A stretch of DNA of 64,000 bases, taken from assembly GCF_902713615.1 (NCBI RefSeq), contig NC_052149.1:126607256-126671255 (forward strand). Direction: 5' to 3'. This stretch comes from Scyliorhinus canicula (taxonomy: Eukaryota). The notes under the pieces are model-generated. The model was not told where the DNA came from and made no database searches. It was given only the letters and a program-made list of their open reading frames with translations. Positions 26,373 to 62,024 of the stretch are shown here, piece after piece. How positions within the stretch are numbered: the first letter of the stretch is position 1; each line of letters starts with the position of its first letter. A program made the position numbers and the translations under genes.

Positions 26373-26384
26373 TCCGACATCCAT

Positions 26385-27050
26385 CACTGGATCAGCTGAA
26401 ATGTCCTCCAATTAAATATTGGGAATACTGAATCCATTGTTTTCAGCCCCCACTCCAAACTCAGTTCTCTAACTAGCTAATCCATCCCTCTCCATGGTAA
26501 CAGTCTGCCATTAAACTAGTCTCTTCACAACCTGGGGCTGACATTTAACCCCGAGCTGAGCTTCCGACCTCATATTGGTGACATCACTAACATGGCCTTC
26601 TTCCACCTCAGTAACATCGCTCAACTTCACCCGTCTCAGCTCATCTACTGCGGAAACCATCATCCATGTCTCCGTTACCTCTGGACGTGACTATTCCAAT
26701 ACACTCCTGGCTGCTCTCCCACATCCTACCCTCCGGAAACATGAGCTCATCCAAAACTCTGCTGTCCCAACCTGAACTCCCACCAAGTCCCGTTCCCCTA
26801 TCACCCCCTGTGCTCACTGACCCACACTGACTCCTGGCCAAGCAATGTCTTGGTTTTAAAATTCTCATCCTTGTTTTCCAATCCCTCCATGTCCTCGCCC
26901 CTCCCTATCTCTGGAATCTCCTCCAGCCCCACAACCCTCCGAGACATCTGCGCTCCTCTAATTCTGGCCCCTTGTACATTCCTGATCAGAATCGCTCCCC
27001 CATTGGTGGCTGTGCCTTCAGCTGCCATTGCCAAGGCCTGTAGCCATCTG
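26385..27050 (+). mobile_element. L2-like LINE 3' remnant
   Basis: Similar to 4600-4980 (CTCCGTTACCTCTGGACGTGACTATTCCAA...CCAAAACTCTGCTG...ATCACCCCCTGTGCTC). Confidence 0.6.
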
Positions 27051-27532
27051 CCTGCGCATCCCACTGACCACCCACCATGGCCCATGGCTGTGCAGAGCGT
27101 CACCGGCATACCCCCCCCCCCCCCCAACCCCCATCACCACCACCCGATCCCCAACCTCCCCCTCCCTTCTGACAGCCGGGCGCCACCCTGCTGGCGGGGC
27201 AACATGAGGCCCACCCAAGGAGAACGCCCACATGGGTTGTACCATCCACCGGTACCCCTGCCGGCAGGAATGGGTGCCTGGGTCTGAGTATTCCATTACA
27301 CTCCTGACTTGTGCCTTGTAGATAGTGGGCAGGCAAGGAGTCAGGAGGTGGGTTACTCACCACATGACTTCCTAACCTCTGACCTGTTCTTGTCGCCACA
27401 GTTTTTAGATGGCTCAACCAGTTCAGTTTCTGGTCAATGGCAACCCCAGGATGTTTAAAATGGGGATTTAGCAATGGCAATGCCAGTGAAAGACATGGAG
27501 CAATGTTTAACTTCCCTCTAGTTGGATGGGGT

Positions 27533-27845
27533 CACAGTGGTTAGCACTGTTGCTTCACAGCGCCAGGTTCCCAGGTTCGATTCCCCGCTGGGTCACTGTC
27601 TGTGAGGAGCCTGCACGTTCTCCCCGTGTCTGCGTGGGTTTCCTCCGGGTGCTCCGGTTTCCTCCCACAGTCCAAAGACATGCAGGTTAGGTGGATTGGC
27701 CATACTGCACCACCCTCATTGTCCAAAACGGTCAGGAGGGGTTATTGGGTTACGGGGATAGGGTGGAAGTGAGGGCTTGAGTGGGTCGGTGCAGAATTAA
27801 TGGGCCGAATGGTCTTCGCCTGCACTGTGTGTTCTATGTTCTATG
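27533..27845 (+). mobile_element. HE1-type SINE
   Basis: CACAGTGGTTAGCACTGTTGCTTCACAGCGCCAGG head; TTCTATG tail. Confidence 0.85.
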
Positions 27846-27849
27846 TGCT

Positions 27850-28260
27850 GGGTATGACTCCGACCAGCGGAGGGTTTCCCCCCTGATTCCCATTGACACC
27901 AGTTTAGCTCAGGTTCCTTGATGCCAAACTCGGTTAAATGCTGCCTCGATGTCAAAGGGCAGTCACTCTGACCTCACCTCTGGAGTTCAGCTGTTTTGTC
28001 CATGTTGAGCTGAGTGACTTTGGCAGAACCCAAACTGAGCATCAGTGAGCAGGTTATTGTGTAGCAAGTGGCACTTGATAGCGTTGTTGATGATCCCTTT
28101 CATCATTTTGCTGATGATTGAGAGTGGGCTTATGGACGGTAATTGGCCGGATTGGATTTGTTCTGCTTTTTGTGTACAGGACATTCCTGGGGAATTTTCC
28201 ACATTGCTGGGTAGATGCCAGTGATGTACCTGCACTGGAACAGCTCGTCCTGGAGCGGCG
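27850..28260 (-). mobile_element. CR1/L2-group LINE RT fragment
   Basis: Minus ORF 27987-28280 contains NNLLTDAQFGF; homologous to 43780-44050 and 58500-58870. Confidence 0.7.
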
Positions 28261-28339
28261 GGAGGAACCACCCGACTCAATAACCACCACCCGACTCACT
28301 AACCAACCCACCCATCTGGCACCGTGTCCAACTACCATC

Positions 28340-31300
28340 CTACCCAGCTATCACCCTACACAGCTATCACCCTACCCAGCTATCACCCAACACGGCTATC
28401 ACCCTACCCAGCTATCACCCAACACGGCTATCACCCTACCCAGCTATCACCCTACCCAGCTATCACCCAACACGGCTATCACCCTACCCAGCTATCACCC
28501 TACCCAGCTATCACCCTACCCAGCTATCACCCTACCCAGCTATCACCCTACCCATCTATCACCCTACCCAGCTACCCACCCTACCCAGCTATCACCCTAC
28601 CCAGCTATCACCCTACCCAGCTATCACCCTACCCAGCTATCACCCTACCCAGCTATCACCCTACCCAGCTATCACCCTACCCAGCTATCACCCTACCCAG
28701 CTACCCACCCTACCCAGCTATCACCCTACCCAGCTATCAACCTACCCAGCTACCCACCCTACCCAGCTATCACCCTACCCAGCTATCACACTACCCACCC
28801 TACCCAGCTAACACCCTACCCAGCTATCACCCTACCCAGCTATCACCCTACCCAGCTATCACCCTACCCAGCTACCCACCCTACCCAGCTATCACACTAC
28901 CCACCCTACCCAGCTAACACCCTACCCAGCTATCACCCTACCCAACTATCACCCTACCCAGCTATCACCCTACCCAGCTATCACCCTACCCAGCTATCAC
29001 CCTATCCAGCTATCACGCTACCCAGCTATCACCATACCCAGCTATCACCCGACCCAGCTATCACCCTACCCAGCTATCACCCTACCCAGCTATCACCCTA
29101 CCCAGCTATCACCCTACCCAGCTACCATCCTACCCAGCTATCACCCTACCCAACTATCACCCTACCCAGCTATCACCCTACCCAGCTATCACCCTACCCA
29201 GCTATCACCCTATCCAGCTATCACGCTACCCAGCTATCACCCTACCCAGCTATCACCCTACCCAGCTATCATATTGCCCAGCTATCACCCTACCCAGCTA
29301 CCCACCCTACCCAGCTATCACCCTACCCAGCTATCACCCTACCCAGCTATCACCCTACCCAGCTACCCACCCTACCCAGCTATCACCCTAACCAGCTATC
29401 ACCCTACCCAGCTATCACCCTACCCAGCTATCACCCTACCCAGCTATCACCCTACCCAGCTATCACCCTACCCAGCTATCACCCTACCCAGCTATCACCC
29501 TACCCAGCTATCACCCTACCCAGCTACCCACCCTACCCAGCTATCACCCTACCCAGCTATCACCCTACCCAGCTATCACCCTACCCAGCTATCACTCTAC
29601 CCAGCTATCGCCCTACCCAGCTATCATCTACCCAGCTAGCACCCTACCCAGCTATCACCCTACCCAGCTATCACCCTACCCAGCTATCACCCTACCCAGC
29701 TACCCACCCTACCCAGCTATCACCCTACCCAGCTATCACCCTACCCAGCTATCACCCTACCCAGCTATCACCCTACCCAGCTATCACCTACCCAGCTATC
29801 ACCCTACCCAGCTACCCACCCTACCCAGCAATCACCCTACCCAGCTATCACCCCACCCAGCTGTCACCCTACCCATCTACCCACCATACCCAGCTATCAC
29901 CCTACCCAGCTATCACCCTACCCAGCTACCCACCCTACCCAGCTATCACCCTACCCAGCTATCACCCTATCCAGCTATCACCCTACCCAGCTGTCACCCT
30001 ACCCAGCTATCACCCTACCCAGCTATCACCCTACCCAGCTACCCACCCTACCCAGCTATCACCCTAACCAGCTATCACCCTACCCAGCTATCACCCTACC
30101 CAGCTATCACTCTACCCAGCTATCGCCCTACCCAGCTATCACCTACCCAGCTATCACCCTACCCAGCTACCCACCCTACCCAGCTATCACCCTACCCAGC
30201 TATCACCCTACCCAGCTATCACCCTACCCAGCTATCACCCTACCCAGCTATCACCCTACCCAGCTATCACACTACCCAGCAATCACCCTACCCATCTACC
30301 CACCCTACCCAGCTATCACCCTACCCATCTACCCACCGTACCCAGCTATCACCCTACCCAGCTATCACCCTACCCAGCTATCACCCTACCCAGCTATCAC
30401 CCTACCCATCTACCCATCCTACCCAGCTATCACTCTACCCAGCAAACACCCTACCCAGCTATCACCCTGCCCAGCTATCACCCTACCCAGCTATCACCCT
30501 ACCCATCTACCCACCCTACCCAGCTACCCACCCTACCCAGCTATCACCCTACCCAGCTATCACCCTACCCAGCTACCCACCCTACCCAGCTATCACCCTA
30601 CCCAGCTATCACCCTACCCAGCTATCACCCTACCCAGCTATCACCATACCCAGCTATCACACTACCCAGCTGACACCCTCCCCAGCTATCACACTACCCA
30701 GCTATCACCTGACCCAGCTATCACCCTACCCAGCTATCAACCTACCCAGCTATCTCCCTACCCAGCTATCACCCGACCCAGATATCACCCAACCCAGCTA
30801 TCACCCTACCCAGCTATCTCCCTACCCAGCTATCACCCTACCCAGCTATCACCCTACCCAGCTATCACCCTACCCATCTATCACCCTACCCAGCTACAAA
30901 CCTTGCCCAGCTATCACCCTGCCCAGCTATCACCCTACCCAGCTATCCCCTACCCAGCTATCACCCTACCCAGCTATCACCCTACCCAGCTATCACCCTA
31001 CCCAGCTATCACCCTACCCAGCTACCCACCCTACCCAGCTATCACCCTACCCAGCTATCACCCTACCCAGCTATCACCCTACCCAGCTATCACCCTACCC
31101 AGCTATCACCCTACCCATCGGCCCACCCTACCCAGCTATCACCCTACCCATCTACCCACCCTACCCAGCTATCACCCTACCCAGCTATCACCCTACCCAG
31201 CTATCACACTACCCATCTACCCTCCCTACCCAGCTAGCACCCTACCCATCTACCAACCCTACCCAGCTATCACCTTACCCAGCTATCACCCTACCCAGCT

Positions 31301-34300
31301 ATCACCCTACCCAGCTATCACCCTACCCAGCTATCACCCTACCCAGCTATCACCCTACCCAGCTATCACCCTACCCAGCTATCACCCTACCCAGCTATCA
31401 CCCTACCCACCCTACCCAGCTACCACCCTACCCAGCTATCACCCTACCCAGCTATCACCCTACCCAGCTATCACCCTACCCAGCTATAACCCTAGCCAGC
31501 TGCCCACCCAACCCAGCTACCCACCCTACCCAGCTATCACCCTACCCAGCTATCACCCTACCCAGCTATCACCCTACCCAGCTATCACCCTACCCAGCTA
31601 TCACCCTACCCAGCTATCACCCTACCCAGCTATCACCCTACCCAGCTATCACCCTACCCAGCTATCACCCTACCCATTTACCCACTCTACCCAGCTACCG
31701 CCCGAACCACCAGGCACCCTCCCACCTGCCACAGTACACAGCCATCACCCAACCCAGCTATCACCCTACCCATCCACCCACCCTACCCAGCTATCACCCT
31801 ATCCAGCTATCACCCTACCCAGCTATGAACCCACCCAGCTATCACCCTACCCAGCTATCACACTACCCAGCTATCACCATACCCAGCTATCACCCTACCC
31901 AGCTATCAACCCACCCAGCTATCACCCTACCCAGCTATCACCCGACCCAGCTATCACCTTACCCAGCTATCACCCAACCAACCTACCCACCCTACCCAGC
32001 TATCACCCTACCCAGCCATCACCCAACCCAGCTATCACCCTACCCATCCACCCACCCTACCCAGTTATCACCCTACCCAGCTATCACCCTACCCAGCTAT
32101 CACCCCACCCAGCTAACACCCTACCCAGCTACCCACCCTACCCAGCTATCACCCTACACAGCTATCACCCTACCCAGCTAACACCCTTCCCAGCTATCAC
32201 CCTACCCAGCTATCACACTACCCAGCTATCACCATACCCAGCTACAACCCTACCCAGCTATCACCCTACCCAGCTATCACCCTACCCAGCTATCACCCTA
32301 CCCAGCTACCCACCCTACCCATCTACCCACCCTACCCAGCTATCACCATATCCAGCTATCACCCTACCCATCTACCCACCCTACCCAGCAATCACCCTCC
32401 CCATCTACCCACCCTACCCAGCTACCCACCCTACCCAGCTATCACCCTACCCAGCTATCACCCTACCCAGCTATCACCCTACCCAGCTATCACTCTACCC
32501 AGCTATCACCTACCCAGCTATCACCCTACCCAGCTACCCACCCTACCCAGCAATCACCCTACCCAGCTATCACCCCACCCAGCTGTCACCCTACCCATCT
32601 ACCCACCATACCCAGCTATCACCCTACCCAGCTATCACCCTACCCAGCTACCCACCCTACCCAGCTATCACCCTACCCAGCTATCACCCTATCCAGCTAT
32701 CACCCTACCCAGCTGTCACCCTACCCAGCTATCACCCTACCCAGCTATCACCCTACCCAGCTACCCACCCTACCCAGCTATCACCCTAACCAGCTATCAC
32801 CCTACCCAGCTATCACCCTACCCAGCTATCACTCTACCCAGCTATCGCCCTACCCAGCTATCACCTACCCAGCTATCACCCTACCCAGCTACCCACCCTA
32901 CACAGCTATCACCCTAACCAGCTATCACCCTACCCAGCTATCACCCTACCCAGCTATCACCCTACCCAGCTATCACCCTACCCAGCTATCACACTACCCA
33001 GCAATCACCCTACCCATCTACCCACCCTACCCAGCTATCACCCTACCCATCTACCCACCGTACACAGCTATCACCCTACCCAGCTATCACCCTACCCAGC
33101 TATCACCCTACCCAGCTATCACCCTACCCATCTACCCATCCTACCCAGCTATCACTCTACCCAGCAAACACCCTACCCAGCTATCACCCTGCCCAGCTAT
33201 CACCCTACCCAGCTATCACCCTACCCATCTACCCACCCTACCCAGCTACCCACCCTACCCAGCTATCACCCTACCCAGCTATCACCCTACCCAGCTACCC
33301 ACCCTACCCAGCTATCACCCTACCCAGCTATCACCCTACCCAGCTATCACCCTACCCAGCTATCACCATACCCAGCTATCACACTACCCAGCTGACACCC
33401 TCCCCAGCTATCACACTACCCAGCTATCACCCGACCCAGCTATCACCCTACCCAGCTATCAACCTACCCAGCTATCTCCCTACCCAGCTATCACCCGACC
33501 CAGATATCACCCAACCCAGCTATCACCCTACCCAGCTATCTCCCTACCCAGCTATCACCCTACCCAACTATCACCCTACCCAGCTATCACCCTACCCATC
33601 TATCACCCTACCCAGCTACAAACCTTGCCCAGCTATCACCCTGCCCAGCTATCACTCTACCCAGCTATCCCCTACCCAGCTATCACCATACCCAGCTATC
33701 ACCCTACCCAGCTATCACCCTACCCAGCTATCACCCTACCCAGCTACCCACCCTACCCAGCAATCACCTTACCCAGCTATCACACTACCCAGCTGACACC
33801 CTCCCCAGCTATCACACTACCCAGCTATCACCCGACCCAGCTATCACCCTACCCAGCTATCAACCTACCCAGCTATCTCCCTACCCAGCTATCACCCGAC
33901 CCAGATATCACCCAACCCAGCTATCACCCTACCCAGCTATCTCCCTACCCAGCTATCACCCTACCCAACTATCACCCTACCCAGCTATCACCCTACCCAT
34001 CTATCACCCTACCCAGCTACAAACCTTGCCCAGCTATCACCCTGCCCAGCTATCACCCTACCCAGCTATCCCCTACCCAGCTATCACCCTACCCAGCTAT
34101 CACCCTACCCAGCTATCACCCTACCCAGCTATCACCCTACCCAGCTACCCACCCTACCCAGCAATCACCCTACCCAGCTATCACCCTACCCAGCTATCAC
34201 CCTACCCAGCTATCACCCTACCCAGCTATCACCCTACCCATCGGCCCACCCTACCCAGCTATCACCCTACCCATCTACCCACCCTACCCAGCAATCACCC

Positions 34301-37300
34301 TACCCAGCTATCACCCTACCCAGCTATCACCCTACCCATCTACCCTCCCTACCCAGCTAGCACCCTACCCATCTACCAACCCTACCCAGCTATCACCTTA
34401 CCCAGCTATCACCCTACCCAGCTATCACCCTACCCAGCTATCACCCTACCCAGCAATCACCCTACCCAGCTATCACCCTGCCCAGCTATCACCCTACCCA
34501 GCTATCACCCTACCCAGCTATCACCCTACCCACCCTACCCAGCTACCACCCTACCCAGCTATCACCCTACCCAGCTATCACCCTACCCAGCTATCACCCT
34601 ACCCAGCTATAACCCTAGCCAGCTGCCCACCCAACCCAGCTACCCACCCTACCCAGCTATCACCCTACCCAGCTATCACCCTACCCAGCTATCACCCTAC
34701 CCAGCTATCACCCTACCCAGCTATCACCCTACCCAGCTATCACCCTACCCAGCTATCACCCAACCCAGCTATCACCCTACCCAGCTATCACCCTACCCAT
34801 TTACCCACTCTACCCAGCTACCGCCCGAACCACCAGGCACCCTCCCACCTGCCACAGTACACAGCCATCACCCAACCCAGCTATCACCCTACCCATCCAC
34901 CCACCCTACCCAGCTATCACCCTATCTAGCTATCACCCTACCCAGCTATGAACCCACCCAGCTATCACCCTACCCAGCTATCACACTACCCAGCTATCAC
35001 CATACCCAGCTATCACCCTACCCAGCTATCAACCCACCCAGCTATCACCCTACCCAGCTATCACCCGACCCAGCTATCACCTTACCCAGCTATCACCCAA
35101 CCAACCTACCCACCCTACCCAGCTATCACCCTACCCAGCCATCACCCAACCCAGCTATCACCCTACCCATCCACCCACCCTACCCAGTTATCACCCTACC
35201 CAGCTATCACCCTACCCAGCTATTACCCCACCCAGCTATCACCCTACCCAGCTACCCACCCTACCCAGCTATCACCCTACACAGCTATCACCCTACCCAG
35301 CTAACACCCTTCCCAGCTATCACCCTACCCAGCTATCACACTACCCAGCTATCACCATACCCAGCTACAACCCTACCCAGCTATCACCCTACCCAGCTAT
35401 CACCCTACCCAGCTATCACCCTACCCAGCTACCCACCCTACCCATCTACCCACCCTACCCAGCTATCACCATATCCAGCTATCACCCTACCCATCTACCC
35501 ACCCTACCCAGCAATCACCCTCCCCATCTACCCACCCTACCCAGCTACCCACCCTACCCAGCTATCACCCTACCCAGCTATCACCCTACCCAGCTATCAC
35601 CCTACCCAGCTATCACTCTACCCAGCTATCACCTACCCAGCTATCACCCTACCCAGCTACCCACCCTACACAGCAATCACCCTACCCAGCTATCACCCCA
35701 CCCAGCTGTCACCCTACCCATCTACCCACCATACCCAGCTATCACCCTACCCAGCTATCACCCTACCCAGCTACCCACCCTACCCAGCTATCACCCTACC
35801 CAGCTATCACCCTATCCAGCTATCACCCTACCCAGCTGTCACCCTACCCAGCTATCACCCTACCCAGCTATCACCCTACCCAGCTACCCACCCTACCCAG
35901 CTATCACCCTAACCAGCTATCACCCTACCCAGCTATCACCCTACCCAGCTATCACTCTACCCAGCTATCGCCCTACCCAGCTATCACCTACCCAGCTATC
36001 ACCCTACCCAGCTACCCACCCTACCCAGCTATCACCCTAACCAGCTATCACCCTACCCAGCTATCACCCTACCCAGCTATCACCCTACCCAGCTATCACC
36101 CTACCCAGCTATCACACTACCCAGCAATCACCCTACCCATCTACCCACCCTACCCAGCTATCACCCTACCCATCTACCCACCGTACACAGCTATCACCCT
36201 ACCCAGCTATCACCCTACCCAGCTATCACCCTACCCAGCTATCACCCTACCCATCTACCCATCCTACCCAGCTATCACTCTACCCAGCAAACACCCTACC
36301 CAGCTATCACCCTGCCCAGCTATCACACTACCCAGCTATCACCCGACCCAGCTATCACCCTACCCAGCTATCAACCTACCCAGCTATCTCCCTACCCAGC
36401 TATCACCCGACCCAGATATCACCCAACCCAGCTATCACCCTACCCAGCTATCTCCCTACCCAGCTATCACCCTACCCAACTATCACCCTACCCAGCTATC
36501 ACCCTACCCATCTATCACCCTACCCAGCTACAAACCTTGCCCAGCTATCACCCTGCCCAGCTATCACCCTACCCAGCTATCCCCTACCCAGCTATCACCC
36601 TACCCAGCTATCACCCTACCCAGCTATCACCCTACCCAGCTATCACCCTACCCAGCTACCCACCCTACCCAGCAATCACCTTACCCAGCTATCACCCTAC
36701 CCAGCTATCACCCTACCCAGCTATCACCCTACCCAGCTATCACCCTACCCATCGGCCCACCCTACCCAGCTATCACCCTACCCATCTACCCACCCTACCC
36801 AGCAATCACCCTACCCAGCTATCACCCTACCCAGCTATCACACTACCCATCTACCCTCCCTACCCAGCTAGCACCCTACCCATCTACCAACCCTACCCAG
36901 CTATCACCTTACCCAGCTATCACCCTACCCAGCTATCACCCTACCCAGCTATCACCCTACCCAGCAATCACCCTACCCAGCTATCACCCTGCCCAGCTAT
37001 CACCCTACCCAGCTATCACCCTACCCAGCTATCACCCTACCCACCCTACCCAGCTACCACCCTACCCAGCTATCACCCTACCCAGCTATCACCCTACCCA
37101 GCTATCACCCTACCCAGCTATAACCCTAGCCAGCTGCCCACCCAACCCAGCTACCCACCCTACCCAGCTATCACCCTACCCAGCTATCACCCTACCCAGC
37201 TATCACCCTACCCAGCTATCACCCTACCCAGCTATCACCCTACCCAGCTATCACCCTACCCAGCTATCACCCTACCCAGCTATCACCCTACCCAGCTATC

Positions 37301-40300
37301 ACCCTACCCATTTACCCACTCTACCCAGCTACCGCCCGAACCACCAGGCACCCTCCCACCTGCCACAGTACACAGCCATCACCCAACCCAGCTATCACCC
37401 TACCCATCCACCCACCCTACCCAGCTATCACCCTATCTAGCTATCACCCTACCCAGCTATGAACCCACCCAGCTATCACCCTACCCAGCTATCACACTAC
37501 CCAGCTATCACCATACCCAGCTATCACCCTACCCAGCTATCAACCCACCCAGCTATCACCCTACCCAGCTATCACCCGACCCAGCTATCACCTTACCCAG
37601 CTATCACCCAACCAACCTACCCACCCTACCCAGCTATCACCCTACCCAGCCATCACCCAACCCAGCTATCACCCTACCCATCCACCCACCCTACCCAGTT
37701 ATCACCCTACCCAGCTATCACCCTACCCAGCTATTACCCCACCCAGCTATCACCCTACCCAGCTACCCACCCTACCCAGCTATCACCCTACACAGCTATC
37801 ACCCTACCCAGCTAACACCCTTCCCAGCTATCACCCTACCCAGCTATCACACTACCCAGCTATCACCATACCCAGCTACAACCCTACCCAGCTATCACCC
37901 TACCCAGCTATCACCCTACCCAGCTATCACCCTACCCAGCTACCCACCCTACCCATCTACCCACCCTACCCAGCTATCACCATATCCAGCTATCACCCTA
38001 CCCATCTACCCACCCTACCCAGCAATCACCCTCCCCATCTACCCACCCTACCCAGCTACCCACCCTACCCAGCTATCACCCTACCCAGCTATCACCCTAC
38101 CCAGCTATCACCCTACCCAGCTATCACCCTACCCAGCTATCACCTACCCAGCTATCACCCTACCCAGCTACCCACCCTACACAGCAATCACCCTACCCAG
38201 CTATCACCCCACCCAGCTGTCACCCTACCCATCTACCCACCCTACCCAGCTATCACCCTACCCAGCTATCACCCTACCCAGCTACCCACCCTACCCAGCT
38301 ATCACCCTACCCAGCTATCACCCTATCCAGCTATCACCCTACCCAGCTGTCACCCTACCCAGCTATCACCCTACCCAGCTATCACCCTACCCAGCTACCC
38401 ACCCTACCCAGCTATCACCCTAACCAGCTATCACCCTACCCAGCTATCACCCTACCCAGCTATCACTCTACCCAGCTATCGCCCTACCCAGCTATCACCT
38501 ACCCAGCTATCACCCTACCCAGCTACCCACCCTACCCAGCTATCACCCTACCCAGCTATCACCCTACCCAGCTATCACCCTACCCAGCTATCACCCTACC
38601 CAGCTATCACCCTACCCAGCTATCACCCTACCCAGCAATCACCCTACCCATCTACCCACCCTACCCAGCTATCACCCTACCCATCTACCCACCGTACACA
38701 GCTATCACCCTACCCAGCTATCACCCTACCCAGCTATCACCCTACCCAGCTATCACCCTACCCATCTACCCATCCTACCCAGCTATCACTCTACCCAGCA
38801 AACACCCTACCCAGCTATCACCCTGCCCAGCTATCACCCTACCCAGCTATCACCCTACCCATCTACCCACCCTACCCAGCTACCCACCCTACCCAGCTAT
38901 CACCCTACCCAGCTATCACCCTACCCAGCTACCCACCCTACCCAGCTATCACCCTACCCAGCTATCACCCTACCCAGCTATCACCCTACCCAGCTATCAC
39001 CATACCCAGCTATCACACTACCCAGCTGACACCCTCCCCAGCTATCACACTACCCAGCTATCACCCGACCCAGCTATCACCCTACCCAGCTATCAACCTA
39101 CCCAGCTATCTCCCTACCCAGCTATCACCCGACCCAGATATCACCCTACCCAGCTATCACCCTACCCAGCTATCACCCTACCCAGCTATCACCCTACCCA
39201 GCTATCACCCTACCCAGCTATCACCCTACCCATCTATCACCCTACCCAGCTACAAACCTTGCCCAGCTATCACCCTGCCCAGCTATCACCCTACCCAGCT
39301 ATCCCCTACCCAGCTATCACCATACCCAGCTATCACCCTACCCAGCTATCACCCTACCCAGCTATCACCCTACCCAGCTACCCACCCTACCCAGCAATCA
39401 CCTTACCCAGCTATCACCCTACCCAGCTATCACCCTACCCAGCTATCACCCTACCCAGCTATCACCCTACCCATCGGCCCACCCTACCCAGCTATCACCC
39501 TACCCATCTACCCACCCTACCCAGCAATCACCCTACCCAGCTATCACCCTACCCAGCTATCACACTACCCATCTACCCTCCCTACCCAGCTAGCACCCTA
39601 CCCATCTACCAACCCTACCCAGCTATCACCTTACCCAGCTATCACCCTACCCAGCTATCACCCTACCCAGCTATCACCCTACCCAGCAATCACCCTACCC
39701 AGCTATCACCCTGCCCAGCTATCACCCTACCCTGCTATCACCCTACCCAGCTATCACCCTACCCACCCTACCCAGCTACCACCCTACCCAGCTATCACCC
39801 TACCCAGCTATCACCCTACCCAGCTATCACCCTACCCAGCTATAACCCTAGCCAGCTGCCCACCCAACCCAGCTACCCACCCTACCCAGCTATCACCCTA
39901 CCCAACTATCACCCTACCCAGCTATCACCCTACCCAGCTATCACCCTACCCAGCTATCACCCTACCCAGCTATCACCCTACCCAGCTATCACCCAACCCA
40001 GCTATCACCCTACCCAGCTATCACCCTACCCATTTACCCACTCTACCCAGCTACCGCCCGAACCACCAGGCACCCTCCCACCTGCCACAGTACACAGCCA
40101 TCACCCAACCCAGCTATCACCCTACCCATCCACCCACCCTACCCAGCTATCACCCTATCCAGCTATCACCCTACCCAGCTATGAACCCACCCAGCTATCA
40201 CCCTACCCAGCTATCACACTACCCAGCTATCACCATACCCAGCTATCACCCTACCCAGCTATCAACCCACCCAGCTATCACCCTACCCAGCTATCACCCG

Positions 40301-42250
40301 ACCCAGCTATCACCTTACCCAGCTATCACCCAACCAACCTACCCACCCTACCCAGCTATCACCCTACCCAGCCATCACCCAACCCAGCTATCACCCTACC
40401 CATCCACCCACCCTACCCAGTTATCACCCTACCCAGCTATCACCCTACCCAGTTATCACCCCACCCAGCTATCACCCTACCCAGCTACCCACCCTACCCA
40501 GCTATCACCCTACACAGCTATCACCCTACCCAGCTAACACCCTACCCAGCTACCCACCCTACCCATCTACCCACCCTACCCAGCTATCACCATATCCAGC
40601 TATCACCCTACCCATCTACCCACCCTACCCAGCAATCACCCTCCCCATCTACCCACCCTACCCAGCTACGCACCCTACCCAGCTACCCACCCTACCCAGC
40701 TATCACCCTACCCAGCTATCTCCCTACCCTGATATCACCCTACCCAGCTACCCACCCTACCCAGCTATCACCCTCCCCAGCTCTCACCATACCCAGCTAT
40801 CACCCTACCCAACCATCACCCAACCCAGCTATCACCCTACCCATCCACCCACCCTACCCAGCTATCACCCTACCCAGCTATCACCCTACCCAGCTATCAC
40901 CCTACACAGCTATACCCCTACCCAGCTATCACCCTACCCATCTACCCTCCCTACCCAGCTACACACCCTACCCAGCTATCACCCTACCCAGCTTTCACCC
41001 TACCCATCGACGCTCCCTACCCAGCTACACACCCTACCCAGGTACACACCCTACCCAGCTATCACCCTACCCAGCTATCACCCTACCCATTTACCCACTC
41101 TACCCAGCTACCGCCCGAACAACCAGGCACCCTCCCACCTGCCACACTACCGAGCCATCACCCAACCCAGCTATCACCCTACCCATCCACCCACCCTACC
41201 CAGCTATCACCCTACCCAGCTATCACCCTACCCAGCTATCACCCCACCCAGCTACCACCCTACCCAGCTACCCACCCTACCCAGCTATCACCCTACCCAG
41301 CTATCACCCTACCCAGCTATCACCCTACCCAGCTATCACACTACCCAGCTATCACCCTACCCAGCTACCCACCCTACCCAGCTATCACCCTACCCAGCTA
41401 TCACCCTACCCAGCTATCACCCTAACCAGCTATCACCCTACCCAGCTATCACCCTACCCAGCTATCACCCTACCCAGCTACCCACCCTACCCAGCTACTC
41501 ACCCTACCCATCTACCCACCCTACCCAGCTATCACCCTATCCAGCTATCACCCTACCCATCTACCCACCCTACCCAGCAATCACCCTCCCCATCTACCCA
41601 CCCTACCCAGCTACGCACCCTACCCAGCTACCCACCCTACCCAGCTATCACCCTCCCCAGCTCTCACCCTACCCAGCTATCACCCTACCCAGCTATCACC
41701 CTACACAGCTATACCCCTACCCAGCTATCACCCTATCCATCTACCCTCCCTACCCAACTATCACCCTACACACCTACCCACCCTACCCAGCTACACACCC
41801 GACCCAGCTATCACCCTACCCGGCTATCACCCTACCCAGCTATCACCCTATCCAGATATCACCCTACCCATCTATCACCATACCCAGCTGTCACCCTACC
41901 CATCTACCCACCCTACCCAGCTATCATCCTACCCAGCTATCACCCTACTCAGCAATCACCCTACCCAGCTATCACCCTACCCAGCTACCCACCCTACCCA
42001 GCTATCACCCTACCCAGCTATCACCCTACCCAGCTATCACCCAACCCAGCTATCACCCAACCCAGCTATCACCCTACCCAGCTATCACCCTACCCAGCTA
42101 TCACCCTACCCAGCTATCACCCTACCCAGCTTTCACCATACCGATCTACCCACCCTACCCAGCCATCACCCGACACAGCTACCACCCTACCTATCCACCC
42201 ACCCTACCTAGCAATCATCCTTCCCAGCTATCAGAGTACTCAGCTATTAC
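28340..42250 (-). repeat. ~13.9-kb satellite, 16-bp unit ATCACCCTACCCAGCT (minus strand AGCTGGGTAGGGTGAT), with higher-order duplications
   Basis: Directly visible. The 16-aa (3 x 16 bp) period YPAITLPSYHPTQLSP appears in all three plus frames, and the plus strand is nearly devoid of G. Confidence 0.98.
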
Positions 42251-42559
42251 CCTCCTCTCTTGCCACCTTACCCACCTCCCTACCCTTCTCTCTTACCTCA
42301 CTCATGTCCCCACCCTCCTCACTTACCTCACGCACCTCCCCACTTGCACACCCTCACACACCCATTGTCTCAGACATTCGAACATTGAGCAGCTTTGTGA
42401 TCTTTACGGCAGCTATCGGTGTAAAAAGGGCAGGTGGTGGCTCTGTGGTATTATCACTGGGCCAGTAATCCAGAGAGCTCAGGCTAATGTTCCCACTGGC
42501 AGCACCCAGCAGTAGCAGAGGCGCATTGATATACCGCCGGGAGGGAGTTACCCTGGGAG

Positions 42560-44710
42560 TCCTGAACATCAACTCAGGACACCATGAAATGCCATGGCAT
42601 CAGGTCAAACCCAGACATGGAAACCTCATGTTGATTACCACGTACCGTCAATCCCTTAACTGATGAATCATTACTCCTCCTTGTTGAACACCACTTGGAG
42701 GAAGCACTGAGGGTGGCAAGGGCACAGAATATACTCTGGATGAGAGAGTTCTATGTCCATCCCCAAGAGTGGCTCAGTAGTACCACCACAGACCGAGCTG
42801 GCCAGGGTCATAAAGGACATAGCTGCTGGACTGGGACTGCAGCAGGTGGTGAGGGAGCCAACAAGAGGGATAAACTTACTTGACCTCATCCTCACCAACC
42901 TGCCTGCCACAGATACATCTGTCCATGGCAGCATCAATAGGAGTGAGCACCGCACAGTCCTTGTGGGGACAAAATCCCATCTTCACATTGAGAATATCCT
43001 CCATCATGTTCTGTGACACTATCACCGTACTAAATGGGATAGACTTTGAACAGATCCAGAAACTCAAGACTGGGCATCCATGAGGTGCTGTGGGTCATCA
43101 TCAGCAGCAGAATTGGACTCAACCACAAACTGCAACCTCATGACTGCATATCCCCCACTCTACCATTCCCACCAACCCAGGGGATCAACCCTGATTTAAA
43201 GAAGAGTGCAGGAGTGCATGCCAGGAACAACACCAGGCACACCGAAAAATGAGGTGTCAACATCCTAAACCTACAACACAGGATTACCTGCCTGCCAAAC
43301 AGCATAAGCAACAAGTATTAGACAGAGCTCAGCAATAGATCCATAACCAACAGGTCAGATCTAAGCTCTGCAGTCCTTCCACATCCAGCCATGAATGGTT
43401 GTGGACAATTAAACAACTCACTGGGGTAGGAGGCTCCACAAAGATCCCCATCCTCAATGATGGGGGAGCCCAACACATAAGTGCAAACAATAAGGCTGAA
43501 GCAGTCATAAAACTCTTCAACCAGAAACGCTGAGTGGATGATCCATCTCGGTCTCCTCCGGAGGTCTTCAGCATCACCGATATCAGCCTTCAGCCAGTTT
43601 GATTCACTCCACATGATATGAAGAAACAGCTGAAGGAACTGGATACTGCAAAGCCTATGGGTCCTGACAACATCCCAGCAATAGTACTGAAGACTTGTGC
43701 CCCAGAACGTGCTTCACGCCTAGCCAAGCTGTTCCAGTACAGCTACAACACTGGCATCTACCCGACAATTTGGAAAGTTCCCAGGTGTGTCCAGTACACA
43801 GGAAACAGGACAAATACAACCCAGCTAATTATCACCCAGTCATTCTGCTCTCAATCATTAGCATCGTGATGGAAGGTGTCATCAACAGTGTTATCAGCGG
43901 CTCTTAGCAATAATCTGCTCACTGAGGCCCAGTTTGGGTTTCACGAGGGTCACTCAGCTCCTGAACTCATTCCAGCCTTGGTTCAAACATAGACAAAGGT
44001 GCTAAACTCTCGAGGTGAGGTGAGAGTGACTGCCCTTGACCAAGTTTGGCATCAAGGAACCCAAGCAAAACTGGACTCAATGGGAAGCAGTGGGAAAAGT
44101 CTCTCCTGATTGGAGCCATACCTGGCACAAAGGTGGATGGTTGTGGTTGTTGGAGGTCAATCATTTCAGTTCCAGGACATCACTGCAGGAGTTCCTCAGA
44201 GTAGTGACCTAGGCCCAACCATCTTCTGTTGCTTCATCAATTACTTTCCTTCAATCATAACGCCAGAGGTGGGGGTGTTCCCGAATGACTGCACAATGTT
44301 CAGCACCATTCACGACTTCTCAGATACTGAAACCATCCCTGTGTAAATGCAGCAAGACCTAGACAATATCCAGGCTTGGGCTGAAAAGTGGCAAGTAACA
44401 TTTGCATCAAACATGTGCCAGACAATGACCATCACCAACAAGAATGAATCTAACTGCTGCCCCTTTCAATGTCATTACCATTGCTGAATGCCCCATTTTC
44501 AACATCCTGGGGGTTATCATTGAGCAGAAACTGAACTGGACCATCCATATCAATACTGTGCTTAACAAAACTCATCAAAGGCTGGGAATCCTACGGCGAG
44601 TAACTAACCTCCTGACTCCCCAAACCCTGTCCACCATGTACAAGACACAAGTCAGGAGTGTGATGGAATACTCTCCACTTGCCTGGATGAGTGCAGCTCC
44701 AACCACCCTC
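42560..44710 (+). mobile_element. CR1/L2-group LINE remnant (endonuclease to RT), heavily frameshifted
   Basis: EEALRVARAQNILW (endonuclease region), KPMGPDNIPAIVLKTCAPE, degenerate NDCTMF at the ADD position, and ILGVIIEQKLNW...VRSVMEYSPLAW. Confidence 0.8.
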
Positions 44711-44959
44711 ACCTTTATCTTTTCAGTGGTGGCAGCAACGGCAGGGTAAAATGCCGATAGTACGGGGATAGACAGCCGCGGTCTGAGGTAATGGCACATT
44801 TCAGAAAGTGCGTGAGTGTCCTGGAGGGTATTTTCAAATTGGATTAAATTGTCAGTCATTTTTTAAGCAAGGGAAGGGACCTGTTTGATTTATTTAATTT
44901 TTTAATAAAATTTTAAATTTAAATAGTTTAGTCATGACAGGCAAGCTCAAAGCTGTGTT

Positions 44960-53640: not shown

Positions 53641-54828
53641 GTGAGTATCTCTGGGATGGTGGGAGGTGTTGGAGACAGCTTAGCAGTGCTAGCCTGGCAT
53701 GCTGGCAGTGCCACCTGGTGACTCTGGCAATGCCATCTGGTCACCCTGGCAATGCCACACTGGCCCTGCCAAGATGTCCATGGGGCACGACCAGTATGGC
53801 ATGAGCACTGCCAGGGTGTCAGGCTGGCACTGCCATGCTGCCCGGGCAGCAGGCTGTCTGAGCCTGGGATCAGGCCCCGAGCGTTCCCTGCCTTTGCCGG
53901 GTGGATGGGGGTGGGTCGAGAACCCCCTAATCGGTAATTTGGGGAATCCGGAGGCCGTGTTGGGAGTTGAGGGATGGGAGCAGCATTTAAAGATCACCCC
54001 CTGATCTCTCCCTGCACTGACGGGCTCAGCTCACAGGAAGTGGATGTCAGTGCGGCCTCGGAGGCTCCTTCCTCACCGAGGCCCAAATATCCCAGAATCC
54101 CGGTTAATAACGGGATCATTTTCAGCACTGCAGGCTCCGGGAAACACCCCACTAAACACTCCCAAAACAGGAGCCTGTTCATTCCCAGTTACATTGCTCC
54201 CTGAGTAAATCAGTCGCTGCAGAAATGTTGTGGTGATCGGAGGGCCAGAGACAGATAGTTGGAATTTTGAAAGTGCCGTTGGAATTGAATTGGGGAATAG
54301 GTTTTTCCAGGGATGGATACAGAAGGGGGTACGGTTGGGGTGTGGAAGGGGGATGTGGTTGGGGAGTGATATAAGGAAGTGATCAGTGATGGTCTTATCT
54401 GTGATTGAAACACTGGGAGTAGTGATACCACGTGAAGTGGTAAGGTCATATACAATTCATAGATTTCATAGAATTCATAGAATTTACAATGCAGAAGGAG
54501 GCCATTCAGCCCATCGAGTCGGCACCGGCCTTTGGAAAGAGCACCCCACCCAAGCCCATGCCTCTACCCTATCCTCGTAACCCAGTAACCCCACCTAACC
54601 TTTTTGGACACTGAGGGCAAATTAGCATGACCAATCCACCTAACCTGCACATCTTTGGACTGTGGGGGAACCGGAGCACCCAAAGAAAACCCACACAGAC
54701 ACAGGGAGAATATGGGAGAAGGGGGAGGTGGGGAATATGGGTTGGAGAATTGTGATTGTGATGATTTAATCCCAGCAACTTTCAGTCTCTTTTCTGATTT
54801 GAATCTTGTAAACTCAGAGATTCCAGAT

Positions 54829-55098
54829 TGTTATAACCTGCCTGCTTCCCACTGGCTGGGGACTAATGGCAATCCCACAATCCTTTGGGAGTACGAGATT
54901 CCCCAATGAGGGGGTTGGAGCAGAAATCATAAACAGATTCGCTGCATAAATAAAGCTGGCCAGTTTGGAACCAGCTAGAGAGGAGTGAGCAGCAAGGGAG
55001 TTGCTGCTGCTGCTGTTGTATACATATGTTATTGTAAATAAATGTTATTTCTTTCTATCCTTCAACTCGTGCTGGATTCTTCGTGACCTCACAAAACA
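54829..55098 (+). mobile_element. Solo-LTR-like sequence
   Basis: TGTTATAACC...CACAAAACA ends, CATAAATAAA and AATAAA motifs. No TSD found. Confidence 0.45.
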
Positions 55099-55284
55099 AA
55101 TAAAACTGATCATTTAAAAATGATTGATAATTGTCTTTGAATCCAATCTTCAGCTAATGTGTCATTGATTGACAGGCCAACCAGCCAATCATGATAATCA
55201 TTTGCTCAAATGCAGCCAATCAGCTGATGGGGAGGAGGGACAGTTCCAAAGCACACTTGAGACACAGACTGAATATTCTTAATG

Positions 55285-55290
55285 TTTAAT
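55285..55290 (-). terminator. Candidate polyadenylation signal (ATTAAA) of the light-chain transcript
   Basis: Minus-strand ATTAAA about 510 nt after the C stop, followed by CA and a GT-rich tract (GTCTGTGTCTCAAGTGTGCTTTG). I saw no AATAAA between it and the stop. Confidence 0.4.
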
Positions 55291-55794
55291 ACCTTTTACA
55301 GATTTACATTGTCAGAAAAAAGACTTGAATAAACAGCCCAGCCTGAGGAAGCTGGAGAAATTCACAGGGATAATATGGAGATTTTCTCAATGACATGAGA
55401 ATCCTGTCCCTTTAAACGGTGACTAAACCTTAAATTGTAACTGCAGGGTGAGCAGGAAGGAGGTCTGGTTTCCTGAAGCAGAGATTTCAGGGGTCACATT
55501 ATTTTGGTACAGCTGACAGTCTTCAGCATCTTAGAGAAGTTTTGCTTGGCATCACGAGTCTGCACTGTCCCATCAAACATTCCCAGGACAAATGCTGCAT
55601 GGGATTATATACAGAGTAAATATCCCTCTACAATGTCCCAAAAACATGTCTTAACCCCTGACCCTCAGAAGTGTCTCAGACCCAGTCCCGAGAAGGAGAG
55701 AGTTTTAAGTCAGTGCTGACAATGACCTTTGCCCTCCCAGCTCACCCCTGTTCTATTTAAAGTTGTGTCTCCTCTATGGACTGTCTCTGACACT

Positions 55795-56123
55795 CTACAC
55801 ACATTCTGATCTCCTGATGGTCTTGCTGAGGGCAGAGGAGAGGCTCACGTGGGTGAGGGCACAGGAGAAGCGGGCGTTGGACTCCCAGGCAGAGCCAGAG
55901 AGGGTCAGCAGGCTGCTGACACTGTAGGTGTTGTCCGAAGCTCGCAGGTAGTTGCTGGTCTGAACCCCGTCTGAAATGGCTGCACCATCCTTCTTCCACT
56001 CCACCACCAGCTCATCGGGATAGAAGTGATTGGCAAGGCACACCAGGGTGGCAGTGCCCTTGGTCTTGACCTCCTCCGGGGAGGGGGGCAGCAGGGTCAG
56101 TGTGGGTTGTGAATTCTCACGGC
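55795..56123 (-). CDS. IGKC: Ig light-chain constant exon, kappa type (shark type III/NS4-like)
   Basis: Acceptor ctctctctttcag before 56123. Reads (S)RENSQPTLTLLPPSPEEVKTKGTATLVCLANHFYPDELVVEWKKDG...FSCALTHVSLSSALSKTIRRSECV*, with both C1-set Cys, the Trp and the terminal Cys. TAG at 55797-55795. Confidence 0.96.
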
Positions 56124-60220: not shown

Positions 60221-61039
60221 AAGTTAATTTATGGGATGTGTGGGTCTGAAGTGGGAACCTGCCATCCTGACCTTGTCTGGCCTACAAGTGACTCCAGATC
60301 CTCAGTAATGTGTTGACTCTGAAATGCCCTCTGGAATGGCCGAGCAAGACACTCAGTTCAAGGGCAATTAGGGATGGGCAATAAATGCTGGCCCAGCCAG
60401 AGATCACACATCACATCCATCAATAAAAATATCTCCAGGGATTTTCAGGAATATGGGATCAGGGATAAATATCAGACTGAACTCGACCCAAAGAGAAAGT
60501 AACTGAGAGTCTCCCCAAAAGCCTGGAACACTGAAGCCACTGGATTGTGAGCCCTGCTGGACCTGTTTGTCATCAGAACTTTGCTAAGAGATAAGCAGGG
60601 AGTGGAGAGAGCAGAGTTAAAGCTGGGGGAAGTGGGACCTCGGTGTCTCACTGTGCTGCTGCTGCTGCTGTGATCAGTTATATCAGAGAGTGTGACAGGG
60701 AGCCAGAGCTCACATCAAACTCTGCCCGTGTCTGTCACACGCAGACTGACAGGAGTCTAGTGAGTGATTTCACTCCATGGTCCAGGAATGTGAACACAGT
60801 CTGTAAACGTCCAGATCTCCTCCACACGGTGGGTAAAAGCTGCTTACTTATATCTTGCTGTTTAAAGGGGGGAATGGAACTAAAGAAATACAGCTGGGCA
60901 CCCTGTTCTACACAGTGTTTTTCAATGAACCATTTCATTCACTGCAGCTCCCCACTAACACCTTCAACTATTCAGTATTTGTGTTTGAGAAAGTTTCAGT
61001 ATTGAAAGGGTTAATAACGGAGGATTGGGGTTTACTTAC

Positions 61040-61074
61040 TCAGTCTGAGCTTGGTTCCTTTACCGAACGTAAAC
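61040..61074 (-). CDS. IGKJ: Ig light-chain J segment (FTFGKGTKLRL)
   Basis: G TTT ACG TTC GGT AAA GGA ACC AAG CTC AGA CTG A|GTAAGT. FGxG motif; a phase-1 donor that matches the C acceptor. Confidence 0.96.
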
Positions 61075-61113
61075 CACACTGACAGCTTCCAGTGCAGGGG
61101 CTGTACAAAAACC
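61075..61113 (-). promoter_or_regulatory. J recombination signal sequence, 23-bp spacer
   Basis: Plus strand: CACACTG (61075-61081), 23 nt, ACAAAAACC (61105-61113). Confidence 0.96.
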
Positions 61114-61488: not shown

Positions 61489-61789
61489 TATGGCCAGCTC
61501 TCACTTTGCTGACAGTAATAATCAGCGACATCCTCATTCTGCACATTGCTGATTGTCAGGGTGAACCTTGTAGTGGACAGTTGTCTGCCGGTGAATCGGT
61601 CGGATATTCCTGTGAATCGAGTTGTTGCATCATAGATCAGCAGAGCCGGTTTTTGACCTTCTCGCTGTTGGAACCATTCAACATCACCACTCGCAGATTG
61701 ACTGGCCGTACAGGTGATGGTTGCGGTCTGGCCCAGGCTCAATGACAGCACCGGGGGAGACTGGGTCATGATGATGTCTCCACTGATAC
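61489..61789 (-). CDS. IGKV: Ig light-chain V exon, kappa type, open frame
   Basis: Acceptor cccctcag before 61789. Reads (G)[99 protein letters not shown], with both Cys and the Trp. V-12/J-23 RSS polarity is kappa-like. Confidence 0.96.
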
Positions 61790-61975
61790 CTGAGGGGTAA
61801 TAGAGAAACAGAGTGAAGTAAGAACTGTCACAGAAAGAGCCTGTACAATGAGATATTGTTGGAGACACTGACTGTTCCTCTGCTTTCAGCATTTTCCCTT
61901 CAATCACAAGTCAGTAGAATTGGATTGAAATGGAGAGCAGGAAAATATTCAAGGTGGAAGGAGAGAGATTTGTAC

Positions 61976-62024
61976 CTGCGATGCAGAATGCCAGAGGCCA
62001 GATCAGCTGGATGGCTGAAATCAT
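61976..62024 (-). CDS. Ig V leader exon (MISAIQLIWPLAFCIA-G)
   Basis: gacaccATG at 62024; a 49-nt hydrophobic exon ending CGCAG|GTAC (phase 1); 186-nt intron to the V exon. Confidence 0.92.

What the first reader, a model, noticed from the sequence alone, without database searches (positions are those of the whole stretch)
28340..42250. 14-kb switch-region-like array (AGCT + G-runs on the Ig sense strand) downstream of a light-chain C exon
Seen: on the strand that encodes the Ig gene the unit is AGCT-GGG-TA-GGG-TGAT. That gives about one AGCT per 16-17 bp (several hundred, not counted exactly), paired GGG runs and extreme G skew, starting about 13.5 kb 3' of the C stop. Known: mammalian S-mu regions are built from GAGCT/GGGGT pentamers, are G-rich on the non-template strand, form R-loops/G4 and concentrate AGCT, the palindromic AID hotspot. 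Sharks are reported to lack conventional S regions, and light chains do not class-switch. The G4 loops here are 2/8/2 nt, just outside the strict N1-7 rule. Inference: if read-through or enhancer transcription reaches it in B cells, it could be an AID/R-loop target promoting deletion, inter-cluster exchange or silencing. It may equally be an unrelated satellite.
Basis: partly seen in the sequence, partly recalled or inferred. Interest (0 to 1): 0.75.

Follow-up and report, generated by a model that had tools for sequence, protein, structure and literature searches.

The report
G-rich 16-bp minisatellite between kappa clusters
A real 13.9-kb run of about 865 copies of a 16-letter G-rich unit lies downstream of a shark antibody light-chain gene and has the composition of a mammalian class-switch region, but its position, its growth pattern and the lack of any special conservation of the AGCT motif point to an ordinary repeat, not a device B cells use.

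Summary
A period-16 tandem array of 865 copies occupies 28328-42253. Its unit on the minus strand is AGCTGGGTAGGGTGAT. That strand is 50.5% G and carries 700 AGCT sites and 1677 G-runs. The array starts 13.5 kb 3' of the stop codon of a kappa-type C exon on the same strand.

By composition it equals a synthetic switch region that works in mouse B cells (46% G, 4 AGCT per 80 bp). The positional criteria fail:
- It follows a light-chain C exon and two ATTAAA signals.
- It lies about 19.8 kb from the only recognisable promoter.
- LINE/SINE debris flanks it on both sides.

AGCT is kept in 80.9% of units, mid-range among the unit's sixteen 4-mers, so nothing suggests selection on it. About 11 kb of the array is four 2.5-3.1-kb blocks that are 97-99.5% identical. 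That is the signature of recent germline unequal exchange.

The scan has already reported a twin 12.8-kb array between two other kappa clusters 284 kb away. I could not check that note.

Best reading: a G4-type minisatellite copied along with the kappa clusters, switch-like in composition only.

The parts
28328..42253 (-). 16-bp tandem array, about 865 units. The G-rich strand is the minus strand, with unit AGCTGGGTAGGGTGAT. It carries 700 AGCT, 1677 G-runs of 3 or more, and 367 extended / 125 strict G4 motifs.
29773..32494 (-). Higher-order block 1 of four (about 2.7 kb).
   Evidence: Exact internal duplications of up to 854 bp at lags 2511/2722/3123. Block-to-block identity 97.4-99.5%, against 92-96% for unrelated array stretches.
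32495..35617 (-). Higher-order block 2 (about 3.1 kb, with a 401-bp extra stretch relative to block 1).
35618..38128 (-). Higher-order block 3 (about 2.5 kb).
38129..40850 (-). Higher-order block 4 (about 2.7 kb).
42254..42360 (.). Degenerate C-rich (on +) low-complexity edge on the side proximal to the Ig gene, including a 30-bp repeat at 42265-42343.
28267..28327 (.). Degenerate C-rich edge on the distal side (19-bp repeat ACCACCCGACTCAATAACC).
42420..44800 (+). Context: SINE-like head followed by LINE endonuclease and RT fragments that abut the array. Their 5' end faces the array.
   Evidence: Sequence read and the ORF at 44444-44749. Assigned by my own recognition of LINE EN/RT motifs; not run against Pfam.
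27100..28240 (-). Context: LINE RT fragment on the other side of the array.
   Evidence: ORF 27100-27480 and the sequence. Assigned by motif recognition; not run against Pfam.
55795..56123 (-). Context: kappa-type C exon (C1-set domain), stop codon at 55795-55797.
54770..55295 (-). Context: the two nearest polyadenylation-type signals (ATTAAA at 55290 and 54770) downstream of the C stop.
61035..61076 (-). Context: J segment (WFTFGKGTKLRLSK); coordinates approximate.
61489..62024 (-). Context: leader exon (ATG near 62024), leader intron and V exon, ending at the 12-spacer RSS whose heptamer starts at 61488.

Best explanation
This is an ordinary, strongly strand-skewed, G-quadruplex-type minisatellite in the TE-rich spacer between two tandem kappa light-chain clusters of a shark genome. 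Earlier notes call the species the small-spotted catshark; I did not verify that here.

Shown: the array arose from a 16-bp unit and grew in the germline by slippage and unequal exchange. Most recently, a block of about 2.7 kb was duplicated in tandem three times, so roughly 11 of the 13.9 kb are young copies.

Inferred: it has no dedicated role in B cells. Its AGCT and G-run content is a by-product of which 16-mer happened to amplify. Because the G-rich strand can fold into G4 and would form R-loops if transcribed in the Ig sense direction, it is probably a length-unstable, replication-impeding tract. Its most likely biological consequence is germline: promoting unequal crossing-over and copy-number change among kappa clusters.
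For: - One array in a single orientation, with degenerate edges, bounded by LINE/SINE fragments on both sides.
- Half of all 80-mers in the array are duplicated, and the dominant lags are 2511, 2722 and 3123 bp. Four blocks are 97.4-99.5% identical, against 92-96% for unrelated array stretches.
- AGCT is retained in 80.9% of units, within the 69.6-91.3% range of the unit's other 4-mers. The G of AGCT is the second most variable position, at 87.5%.
- The window holds at least seven other minisatellite arrays. Earlier notes list multi-kb G4-type minisatellites at non-Ig sites of the same genome (unchecked).
- The array lies 13.5 kb past the C stop and beyond two ATTAAA signals, with no CpG-island-like block between C and the array.
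- It is not coding: the + frames carry 23, 11 and 7 stops, and the word-index protein search found no homologue. There is no Rfam match in 26000-46000.
Against: - By sequence alone the array meets every compositional criterion of an efficient S region: 50.5% G, dense G-clusters, and one AGCT per 20 bp, equal to 4 per 80 bp.
- Its G-rich strand is the Ig sense strand.
- If the twin note holds, the repeat recurs inside the kappa locus. That fits co-duplication but would also fit a locus-specific function.
- Genome-wide distribution was not measured.
Confidence: 0.7

Rival explanations
1. The array is a switch-like AID/R-loop target. Read-through from the kappa cluster, or transcription driven by a TE or an enhancer in the sense direction, forms R-loops over it in activated B cells. 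AID then deaminates the AGCT sites, and the resulting breaks cause deletion, silencing or exchange between kappa clusters.
For: - Minus strand: 50.5% G, 1677 G-clusters, 735 WGCW sites, 13.9 kb long.
- This equals the 46% G, 4 AGCT per 80 bp design that supports CSR in CH12F3 cells.
- The G-rich strand is the Ig sense strand.
- Sharks do exchange V and C between heavy-chain clusters without known S regions, concurrently with AID activity.
- A twin array is reported in another kappa spacer (unchecked).
Against: - The array lies 13.5 kb past the C stop, beyond ATTAAA signals, and about 19.8 kb from the V promoter. CSR efficiency and R-loop formation fall as the distance from the promoter grows.
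- No CpG-island-like candidate promoter lies between C and the array.
- AGCT is not preferentially conserved.
- Light chains have nothing to switch, and I found no report of inter-cluster exchange for shark light chains.
- If the arrays were copied with the clusters, matching orientation is automatic and is not independent evidence.
Confidence: 0.1
2. The array is a structural or chromatin element of the kappa locus. A long G4/i-motif-prone tract might act as a boundary, a replication barrier or a heterochromatin nucleator between neighbouring clusters, and so help each cluster to be regulated or excluded independently.
For: - It sits in the spacer between two same-strand kappa clusters, 13.5 kb after one C and about 36 kb before the next V. 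That geometry is inferred from notes s1-253716 and s1-253717.
- A twin is reported in another spacer.
- G4 motif density is high: 367 motifs in 13.9 kb, against 3-20 per strand in each flank (28.3 kb and 21.7 kb).
Against: - The array has no binding-site content beyond the repeat itself.
- Notes on other kappa cluster pairs (items 6 and 7) do not mention such arrays, so it is apparently not a general feature of the locus.
- Three-quarters of its length is very recent duplication, which is hard to reconcile with a length-constrained functional element.
Confidence: 0.08
3. The repeat is real, but its size and block structure are partly an assembly artefact. The four near-identical blocks could be an over- or under-expansion of a satellite that long-read assemblers handle poorly.
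For: - Exact internal duplications of up to 854 bp, and blocks up to 99.5% identical.
- I could not lay reads across the array.
Against: - The blocks differ by 0.5-2.6% substitutions and by indels of 211-615 bp, unlike a simple assembler stutter.
- DNA runs from two independent samples of the same organism hold about 0.4-0.5 of the words of the junction stretch, although which part they hold is unknown.
Confidence: 0.1
4. The array is a coding repeat: a giant exon on the + strand encoding a Pro/Ser/Thr/Tyr-rich 16-residue repeat (PSYHPTQLSPYPAITL).
For: ORFs of 649 and 1069 codons run through the array. The longest open stretch is 1479 codons.
Against: - The consensus unit contains no stop codon in any + frame, so long ORFs arise automatically.
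- All three frames are nevertheless interrupted, by 23, 11 and 7 stops.
- The word-index protein search found no homologue.
- Frequent 17-bp units shift the frame.
Confidence: 0.02

Closest known systems
GC-skewed, G-quadruplex-forming minisatellites (human CEB1, CEB25, HRAS1 type)
   Same: A short tandem unit (16 bp here; 28-52 nt there), near-absolute G/C strand bias, and one G4 motif per one or two units. These arrays are prone to internal rearrangement (PMC3486850). Here the four near-identical kb-scale blocks show such rearrangement in the germline.
   Different: - The array is much longer (13.9 kb) than typical alleles.
- The main unit's G4 has a long 8-nt purine-containing central loop. 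In yeast, only G4s with short (3 nt or less) pyrimidine loops destabilise arrays (PMC5491262), so G4-driven instability may rest on the 125 strict motifs that come from the 17-bp variant.
- No polymorphism or biophysical data exist for this array.
Mammalian Ig heavy-chain switch (S) regions
   Same: A kb-scale tandem repeat whose non-template strand (relative to the nearby Ig gene) is about 50% G, with G-clusters and AGCT every 20 bp. That matches the 46% G, 4 AGCT per 80 bp design shown to drive R-loops and CSR (PMC4245955).
   Different: - It is not in a J-C or I-C intron and is not upstream of a C gene. It lies 13.5 kb downstream of a light-chain C exon and past poly(A) signals, with no promoter within a few hundred bp.
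- No evidence of transcription, AID action or junctions.
- AGCT is not selectively kept.
Xenopus-type S regions (AT-rich, AGCT-palindrome based)
   Same: A high density of the AGCT palindrome.
   Different: The Xenopus regions are AT-rich and not G-skewed, and they lie upstream of heavy-chain C genes (PMC4279169).
Switch-like G-rich arrays in catshark IgM J-C introns, and the twin 16-letter array between kappa clusters
   Same: The same genome and the same kind of composition. The twin (s1-258557) is described as about 790 copies of a 16-letter G-rich unit with one AGCT per unit, between two kappa clusters.
   Different: The IgM arrays sit in the position where an S region would be; this one does not. 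None of these notes could be checked here, and whether the twin has the same unit sequence is unknown.

Membership tests
Ig class-switch (S) region | kb-scale tandem repeat | tested here: met
   13,926 bp, period 16, 865 copies.
Ig class-switch (S) region | G-rich non-template strand with G-clusters (about 35-50% G) | tested here: met
   The minus (Ig sense) strand is 50.5% G and has 1677 runs of 3 or more G. Reference values come from PMC4245955.
Ig class-switch (S) region | Dense WGCW/AGCT AID hotspots | tested here: met
   700 AGCT and 735 WGCW sites, one AGCT per 19.9 bp. The density is not maintained by selection: retention is 80.9%, mid-range among the unit's 4-mers.
Ig class-switch (S) region | Lies in the intron upstream of a heavy-chain C gene, a few hundred bp downstream of a germline (I) promoter | tested here: not met
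   It lies 13.5 kb downstream of a light-chain C exon, past ATTAAA signals at 55290 and 54770, and about 19.8 kb from the V promoter. No CpG-island-like block lies between C and the array.
Ig class-switch (S) region | Transcribed through in activated B cells (germline transcripts, R-loops) | not testable with these tools
No listed holder of the stretch is on record as RNA.
Ig class-switch (S) region | Somatic AID-dependent mutation and recombination junctions inside it | not testable with these tools
   This needs B-cell versus germline long reads.
G4-forming GC-skewed minisatellite | Tandem unit of about 10-100 bp with strong G/C strand bias | tested here: met
   16-bp unit; GC skew about -0.77 to -0.79 on +.
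G4-forming GC-skewed minisatellite | Four G-triplets within reach, so that a G4 can fold | tested here: met
   367 motifs under N1-12 and 125 under N1-7. ViennaRNA with G4 terms places a quadruplex in both the consensus (-15.1 kcal/mol) and the 17-mer-variant context (-22.3), against -4.2 for the C-rich strand (RNA parameters). Folding in vitro was not tested.
G4-forming GC-skewed minisatellite | Length instability or polymorphism | tested here: inconclusive
   Four blocks of 2.5-3.1 kb at 97.4-99.5% identity show recent germline expansion. Variation between individuals was not measured.
Genome-wide (dispersed or centromeric/subtelomeric) satellite | Many arrays of the same unit at unrelated loci | not testable with these tools
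   No shark genome is searchable here. The window holds no other copy. One twin is reported 284 kb away (unchecked). A related organism's runs hold 0.15-0.17 of the words of the junction stretch, but which part is unknown.
Protein-coding repeat exon | One frame open across the array, with homologues | tested here: not met
   The three + frames carry 23, 11 and 7 stops. None of the 8000 scored candidates reached E <= 0.001.

The most novel reading that the evidence does not exclude
The 16-bp G-rich/AGCT arrays are a kappa-locus-specific element, kept in the sense orientation in several intercluster spacers. In activated shark B cells they would be transcribed, form R-loops and be cut through AID action, giving deletion or V-C exchange between light-chain clusters. 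That would be a light-chain counterpart of the S-region-less 'switching' reported for shark heavy-chain clusters, and a possible evolutionary precursor of S regions.
Probability: 0.06. Interest if true: 0.85.

Novelty: new member of a known kind. Interest (0 to 1): 0.25.

Why it matters
If the ordinary reading is right, the array matters in three practical ways:
- It warns that switch-region-like composition arises by chance when a G-rich, AGCT-bearing short unit amplifies.
- It is a probable driver of germline copy-number change in the kappa cluster family.
- It is a trap for gene predictors, because it yields kilobase-long false ORFs.

It would matter a great deal only if B cells were shown to transcribe and break it. 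Sharks exchange V and C between clusters without known S regions (PMC4279169, PMC4588147), and a natural tract that meets every compositional criterion of an S region would then be a candidate substrate. The array is also a ready natural test sequence for the S-region replacement assay of PMC4245955.

Tried and rejected
1. Reads. No read or contig could therefore be laid, and transcription, copy number and presence in the related organism stay untested. No letters of 46019-46054 were sent to any search tool afterwards. The Rfam scan was limited to 26000-46000. Only local scripts read the whole window file.
2. Other loci through the false ORF. The word-index protein search with 150 residues of the array's peptide scored 8000 candidates and found none at E <= 0.001. 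This gave no route to other loci and also counts against a coding role.
3. Other kappa clusters through the C exon. An exact look-up of the 108-residue C-exon peptide found no record. I ran no further search on an Ig domain: the flanks returned (10 kb at most) would not reach an array 13.5 kb away.
5. The two primary papers on shark switching, PMC3360817 and PMC3839419, are not held. I relied on two reviews instead.
6. A BLAST self-comparison of the array timed out. I replaced it with k-mer diagonals and global alignments.
7. Origin from a TE. No copy of the unit at 3 mismatches or fewer occurs anywhere else in the window, including the flanking LINE/SINE fragments, so no source element was found.
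8. Telomere-derived origin. I considered this because of the CCCTA motif and rejected it. By eye, the unit shares only one hexamer-like piece with (CCCTAA)n.
9. A Kde/RS-like isolated RSS near the array. The only canonical heptamer-spacer-nonamer in the window is the V RSS.
Full report
**What is there.** Tandem Repeats Finder reports a single array at 28328-42253 with period 16, 864.9 copies and 87% matches. The consensus on the + strand is CCAGCTATCACCCTAC. The array holds 700 AGCT, one per 19.9 bp, against one per 269 bp in the rest of the window. Base counts on + are C 7035 and G 883, so the minus strand is 50.5% G. GC skew stays between -0.76 and -0.80 in every full 1-kb bin. The 16-mer matches 660 times at up to 2 mismatches, against 0.05 expected in shuffles. 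At up to 3 mismatches it has no copy outside the array on either strand, and all copies point the same way. Perfect units number 311. The commonest variant is a 17-bp unit, CCAGCTACCCACCCTAC.

**The Ig context is as described.** On the minus strand I found the following:
- a leader exon with its ATG near 62024;
- a V-set exon ending in a perfect 12-spacer RSS at 61488;
- a J segment reading FGKGTKLRLSK near 61067;
- a C1-set exon at 56123-55795, behind a cag splice acceptor.

This is an unrearranged kappa-type V-J-C cluster. The stop codon at 55795 is 13.5 kb from the array's proximal end at 42253. The nearest poly(A)-type signals after the stop are ATTAAA at 55290 and 54770.

Between the C exon and the array lie LINE and SINE fragments and a 48-bp minisatellite at 49160-50507. 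No window of 400 bp there looks like a CpG island, apart from a weak one inside that 48-bp array. On its two sides the array abuts a SINE-like head plus LINE endonuclease/RT on + (about 42420-44800) and a LINE RT fragment on minus (about 27100-28240). These assignments rest on my recognition of LINE motifs; I did not run them against Pfam.

**Anatomy of the array.** A wrap-around alignment of the whole array to the consensus gives per-position conservation of 77-99%. The G of AGCT is the second least conserved position, at 87.5%, with 78 G-to-T changes. The whole AGCT word is intact in 80.9% of units. That is mid-range among the sixteen cyclic 4-mers of the unit, which span 69.6-91.3%. Nothing therefore suggests that AGCT is kept by selection.

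Half of the array's 80-mers occur more than once. Excluding perfect-repeat words, the duplicates fall on three diagonals, at lags of 2511, 2722 and 3123 bp, with exact stretches of up to 854 bp. Global alignments show that four consecutive blocks (29773-32494, 32495-35617, 35618-38128, 38129-40850) are 97.4-99.5% identical and differ by indels of 211-615 bp. Unrelated stretches of the array align at only 92-96%. About 11 of the 13.9 kb are thus very recent kb-scale tandem duplications, the classic footprint of germline unequal exchange in a satellite. The edges are degenerate.

**Physical potential.** The 17-bp variant gives 1/5/2. The array consequently contains 125 non-overlapping strict (N1-7) G4 motifs and 367 under an N1-12 rule. 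The flanks (28.3 kb and 21.7 kb) hold 3-20 per strand. ViennaRNA with quadruplex terms puts a G4 in both contexts, at -15.1 and -22.3 kcal/mol, against -4.2 for the C-rich strand (RNA parameters).

The literature tempers this. In yeast only G4s with short (3 nt or less), pyrimidine-containing loops destabilise minisatellites (PMC5491262), so the main unit's 8-nt loop predicts a modest effect.

**Comparison with switch regions.** Zhang and co-workers showed that an artificial S region of 80-bp repeats, with 46% G on the non-template strand and four AGCT per repeat, supports R-loops and class switching in CH12F3 cells. A 29% G version does much less. Switch regions lie a few hundred bp from their promoters, and CSR falls as that distance grows (PMC4245955). 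This array has 50.5% G and one AGCT per 19.9 bp, so it matches on every compositional measure.

It fails the positional measure. It is not upstream of a C gene, it follows a light-chain C exon and poly(A) signals, and the only recognisable sense-strand promoter is about 19.8 kb away. My searches found no paper reporting such exchange for light chains.

**What could not be tested.** The run search found DNA runs of the same organism holding 0.37-0.54 of the sampled words, runs of a second organism holding 0.15-0.17, and small 'RNA?' runs holding 0.07-0.09. I therefore cannot say which part those runs hold, whether the array is transcribed, or how many copies the genome has.

No searchable collection here holds shark genomes. 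A search with the array's false peptide found nothing, and an exact look-up of the C-exon peptide found no record.

**Earlier notes of this scan** (unchecked AI notes):
- The scan has seen this before on other DNA. Note s1-258557 describes a 12.8-kb array of about 790 copies of a 16-letter G-rich unit with one AGCT per unit, between two kappa clusters 284 kb beyond this window. Its follow-up read it as an ordinary satellite copied with the clusters.
- Notes s1-253716 and s1-253717 place another kappa cluster with its V start about 7.5 kb before this window. From the stated geometry of its upstream DR3 array I infer that it lies on the minus strand. The array would then sit in a spacer of about 63 kb, 13.5 kb after one C and about 36 kb before the next V.
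- Many notes describe switch-like arrays in IgM J-C introns, and others describe G4-type minisatellites at non-Ig sites.

Together these suggest that G-rich minisatellites are common in this genome, and that this one was co-duplicated with kappa clusters. Co-duplication would also explain the matching orientation without invoking function.

**Verdict.** The best explanation, at about 0.7, is a G4-type minisatellite that expands by germline unequal exchange and has no dedicated somatic role. Its likeliest effect is on the copy-number evolution of the kappa cluster family. The AID/R-loop reading stays possible, at about 0.1 (0.06 for the fuller light-chain exchange version), and is cleanly testable with lymphoid RNA, DRIP and long reads.

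Noticed in passing
window 63046-63456: A 23-bp minisatellite (17.9 copies, ACCCCTGACCTCACTGACCTGTT on +). On the Ig (minus) strand it reads AGGTCAgtgAGGTCA, a nuclear-receptor DR3, with 11 intact DR3 pairs. It lies about 1.0-1.4 kb upstream of the V leader ATG (about 62024). Earlier notes report the same kind of array upstream of other kappa clusters (s1-253717, s1-268295, s1-258627, s1-300759).
   Followed up: partly
window 6295-6836 versus 22073-22379 and 22646-22758: Arrays of the same 36-bp unit lie in opposite orientation about 15 kb apart. The first abuts a 54-bp array of 30 copies at 6846-8471. This may be a large inverted duplication or two insertions of one repeat-bearing element.
   Followed up: no
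window 56401-57200: A CpG-island-like block (GC up to 0.71, CpG observed/expected 0.77-0.93) lies inside the J-C intron, 0.3-1.1 kb upstream of the C exon. Its ORF peptides resemble those of the CpG-rich block at 10401-10800 (GGILRHPAG against GGILRYPAG), and another CpG-rich block lies at 5201-6000. It is probably a repeated element, not a unique enhancer.
   Followed up: partly
window 28118-42468, + strand: The unit has no stop codon in any + frame, and 16 is not a multiple of 3. All three frames therefore encode the same 16-residue repeat (PSYHPTQLSPYPAITL), and ORFs of 649-1069 codons appear. These are false ORFs that gene callers could report as a proline-rich protein.
   Followed up: yes
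window 49160-50507, 23762-24408, 25537-25887: Further minisatellites lie in the same spacer: a 48-bp unit with 28 copies, a 91-bp unit with 7 copies, and a CpG-rich 88-bp unit with 4 copies. Tandem repeats make up roughly 30% of this window.
   Followed up: no
I worked beside it and sent none of it to any search tool afterwards.
   Followed up: no
window 42420-42560: A tRNA-like or SINE-like head directly precedes a LINE endonuclease region at the array's proximal edge. This recalls note s1-268271, which describes a CR1-group LINE whose 5' UTR is a SINE head.
   Followed up: no
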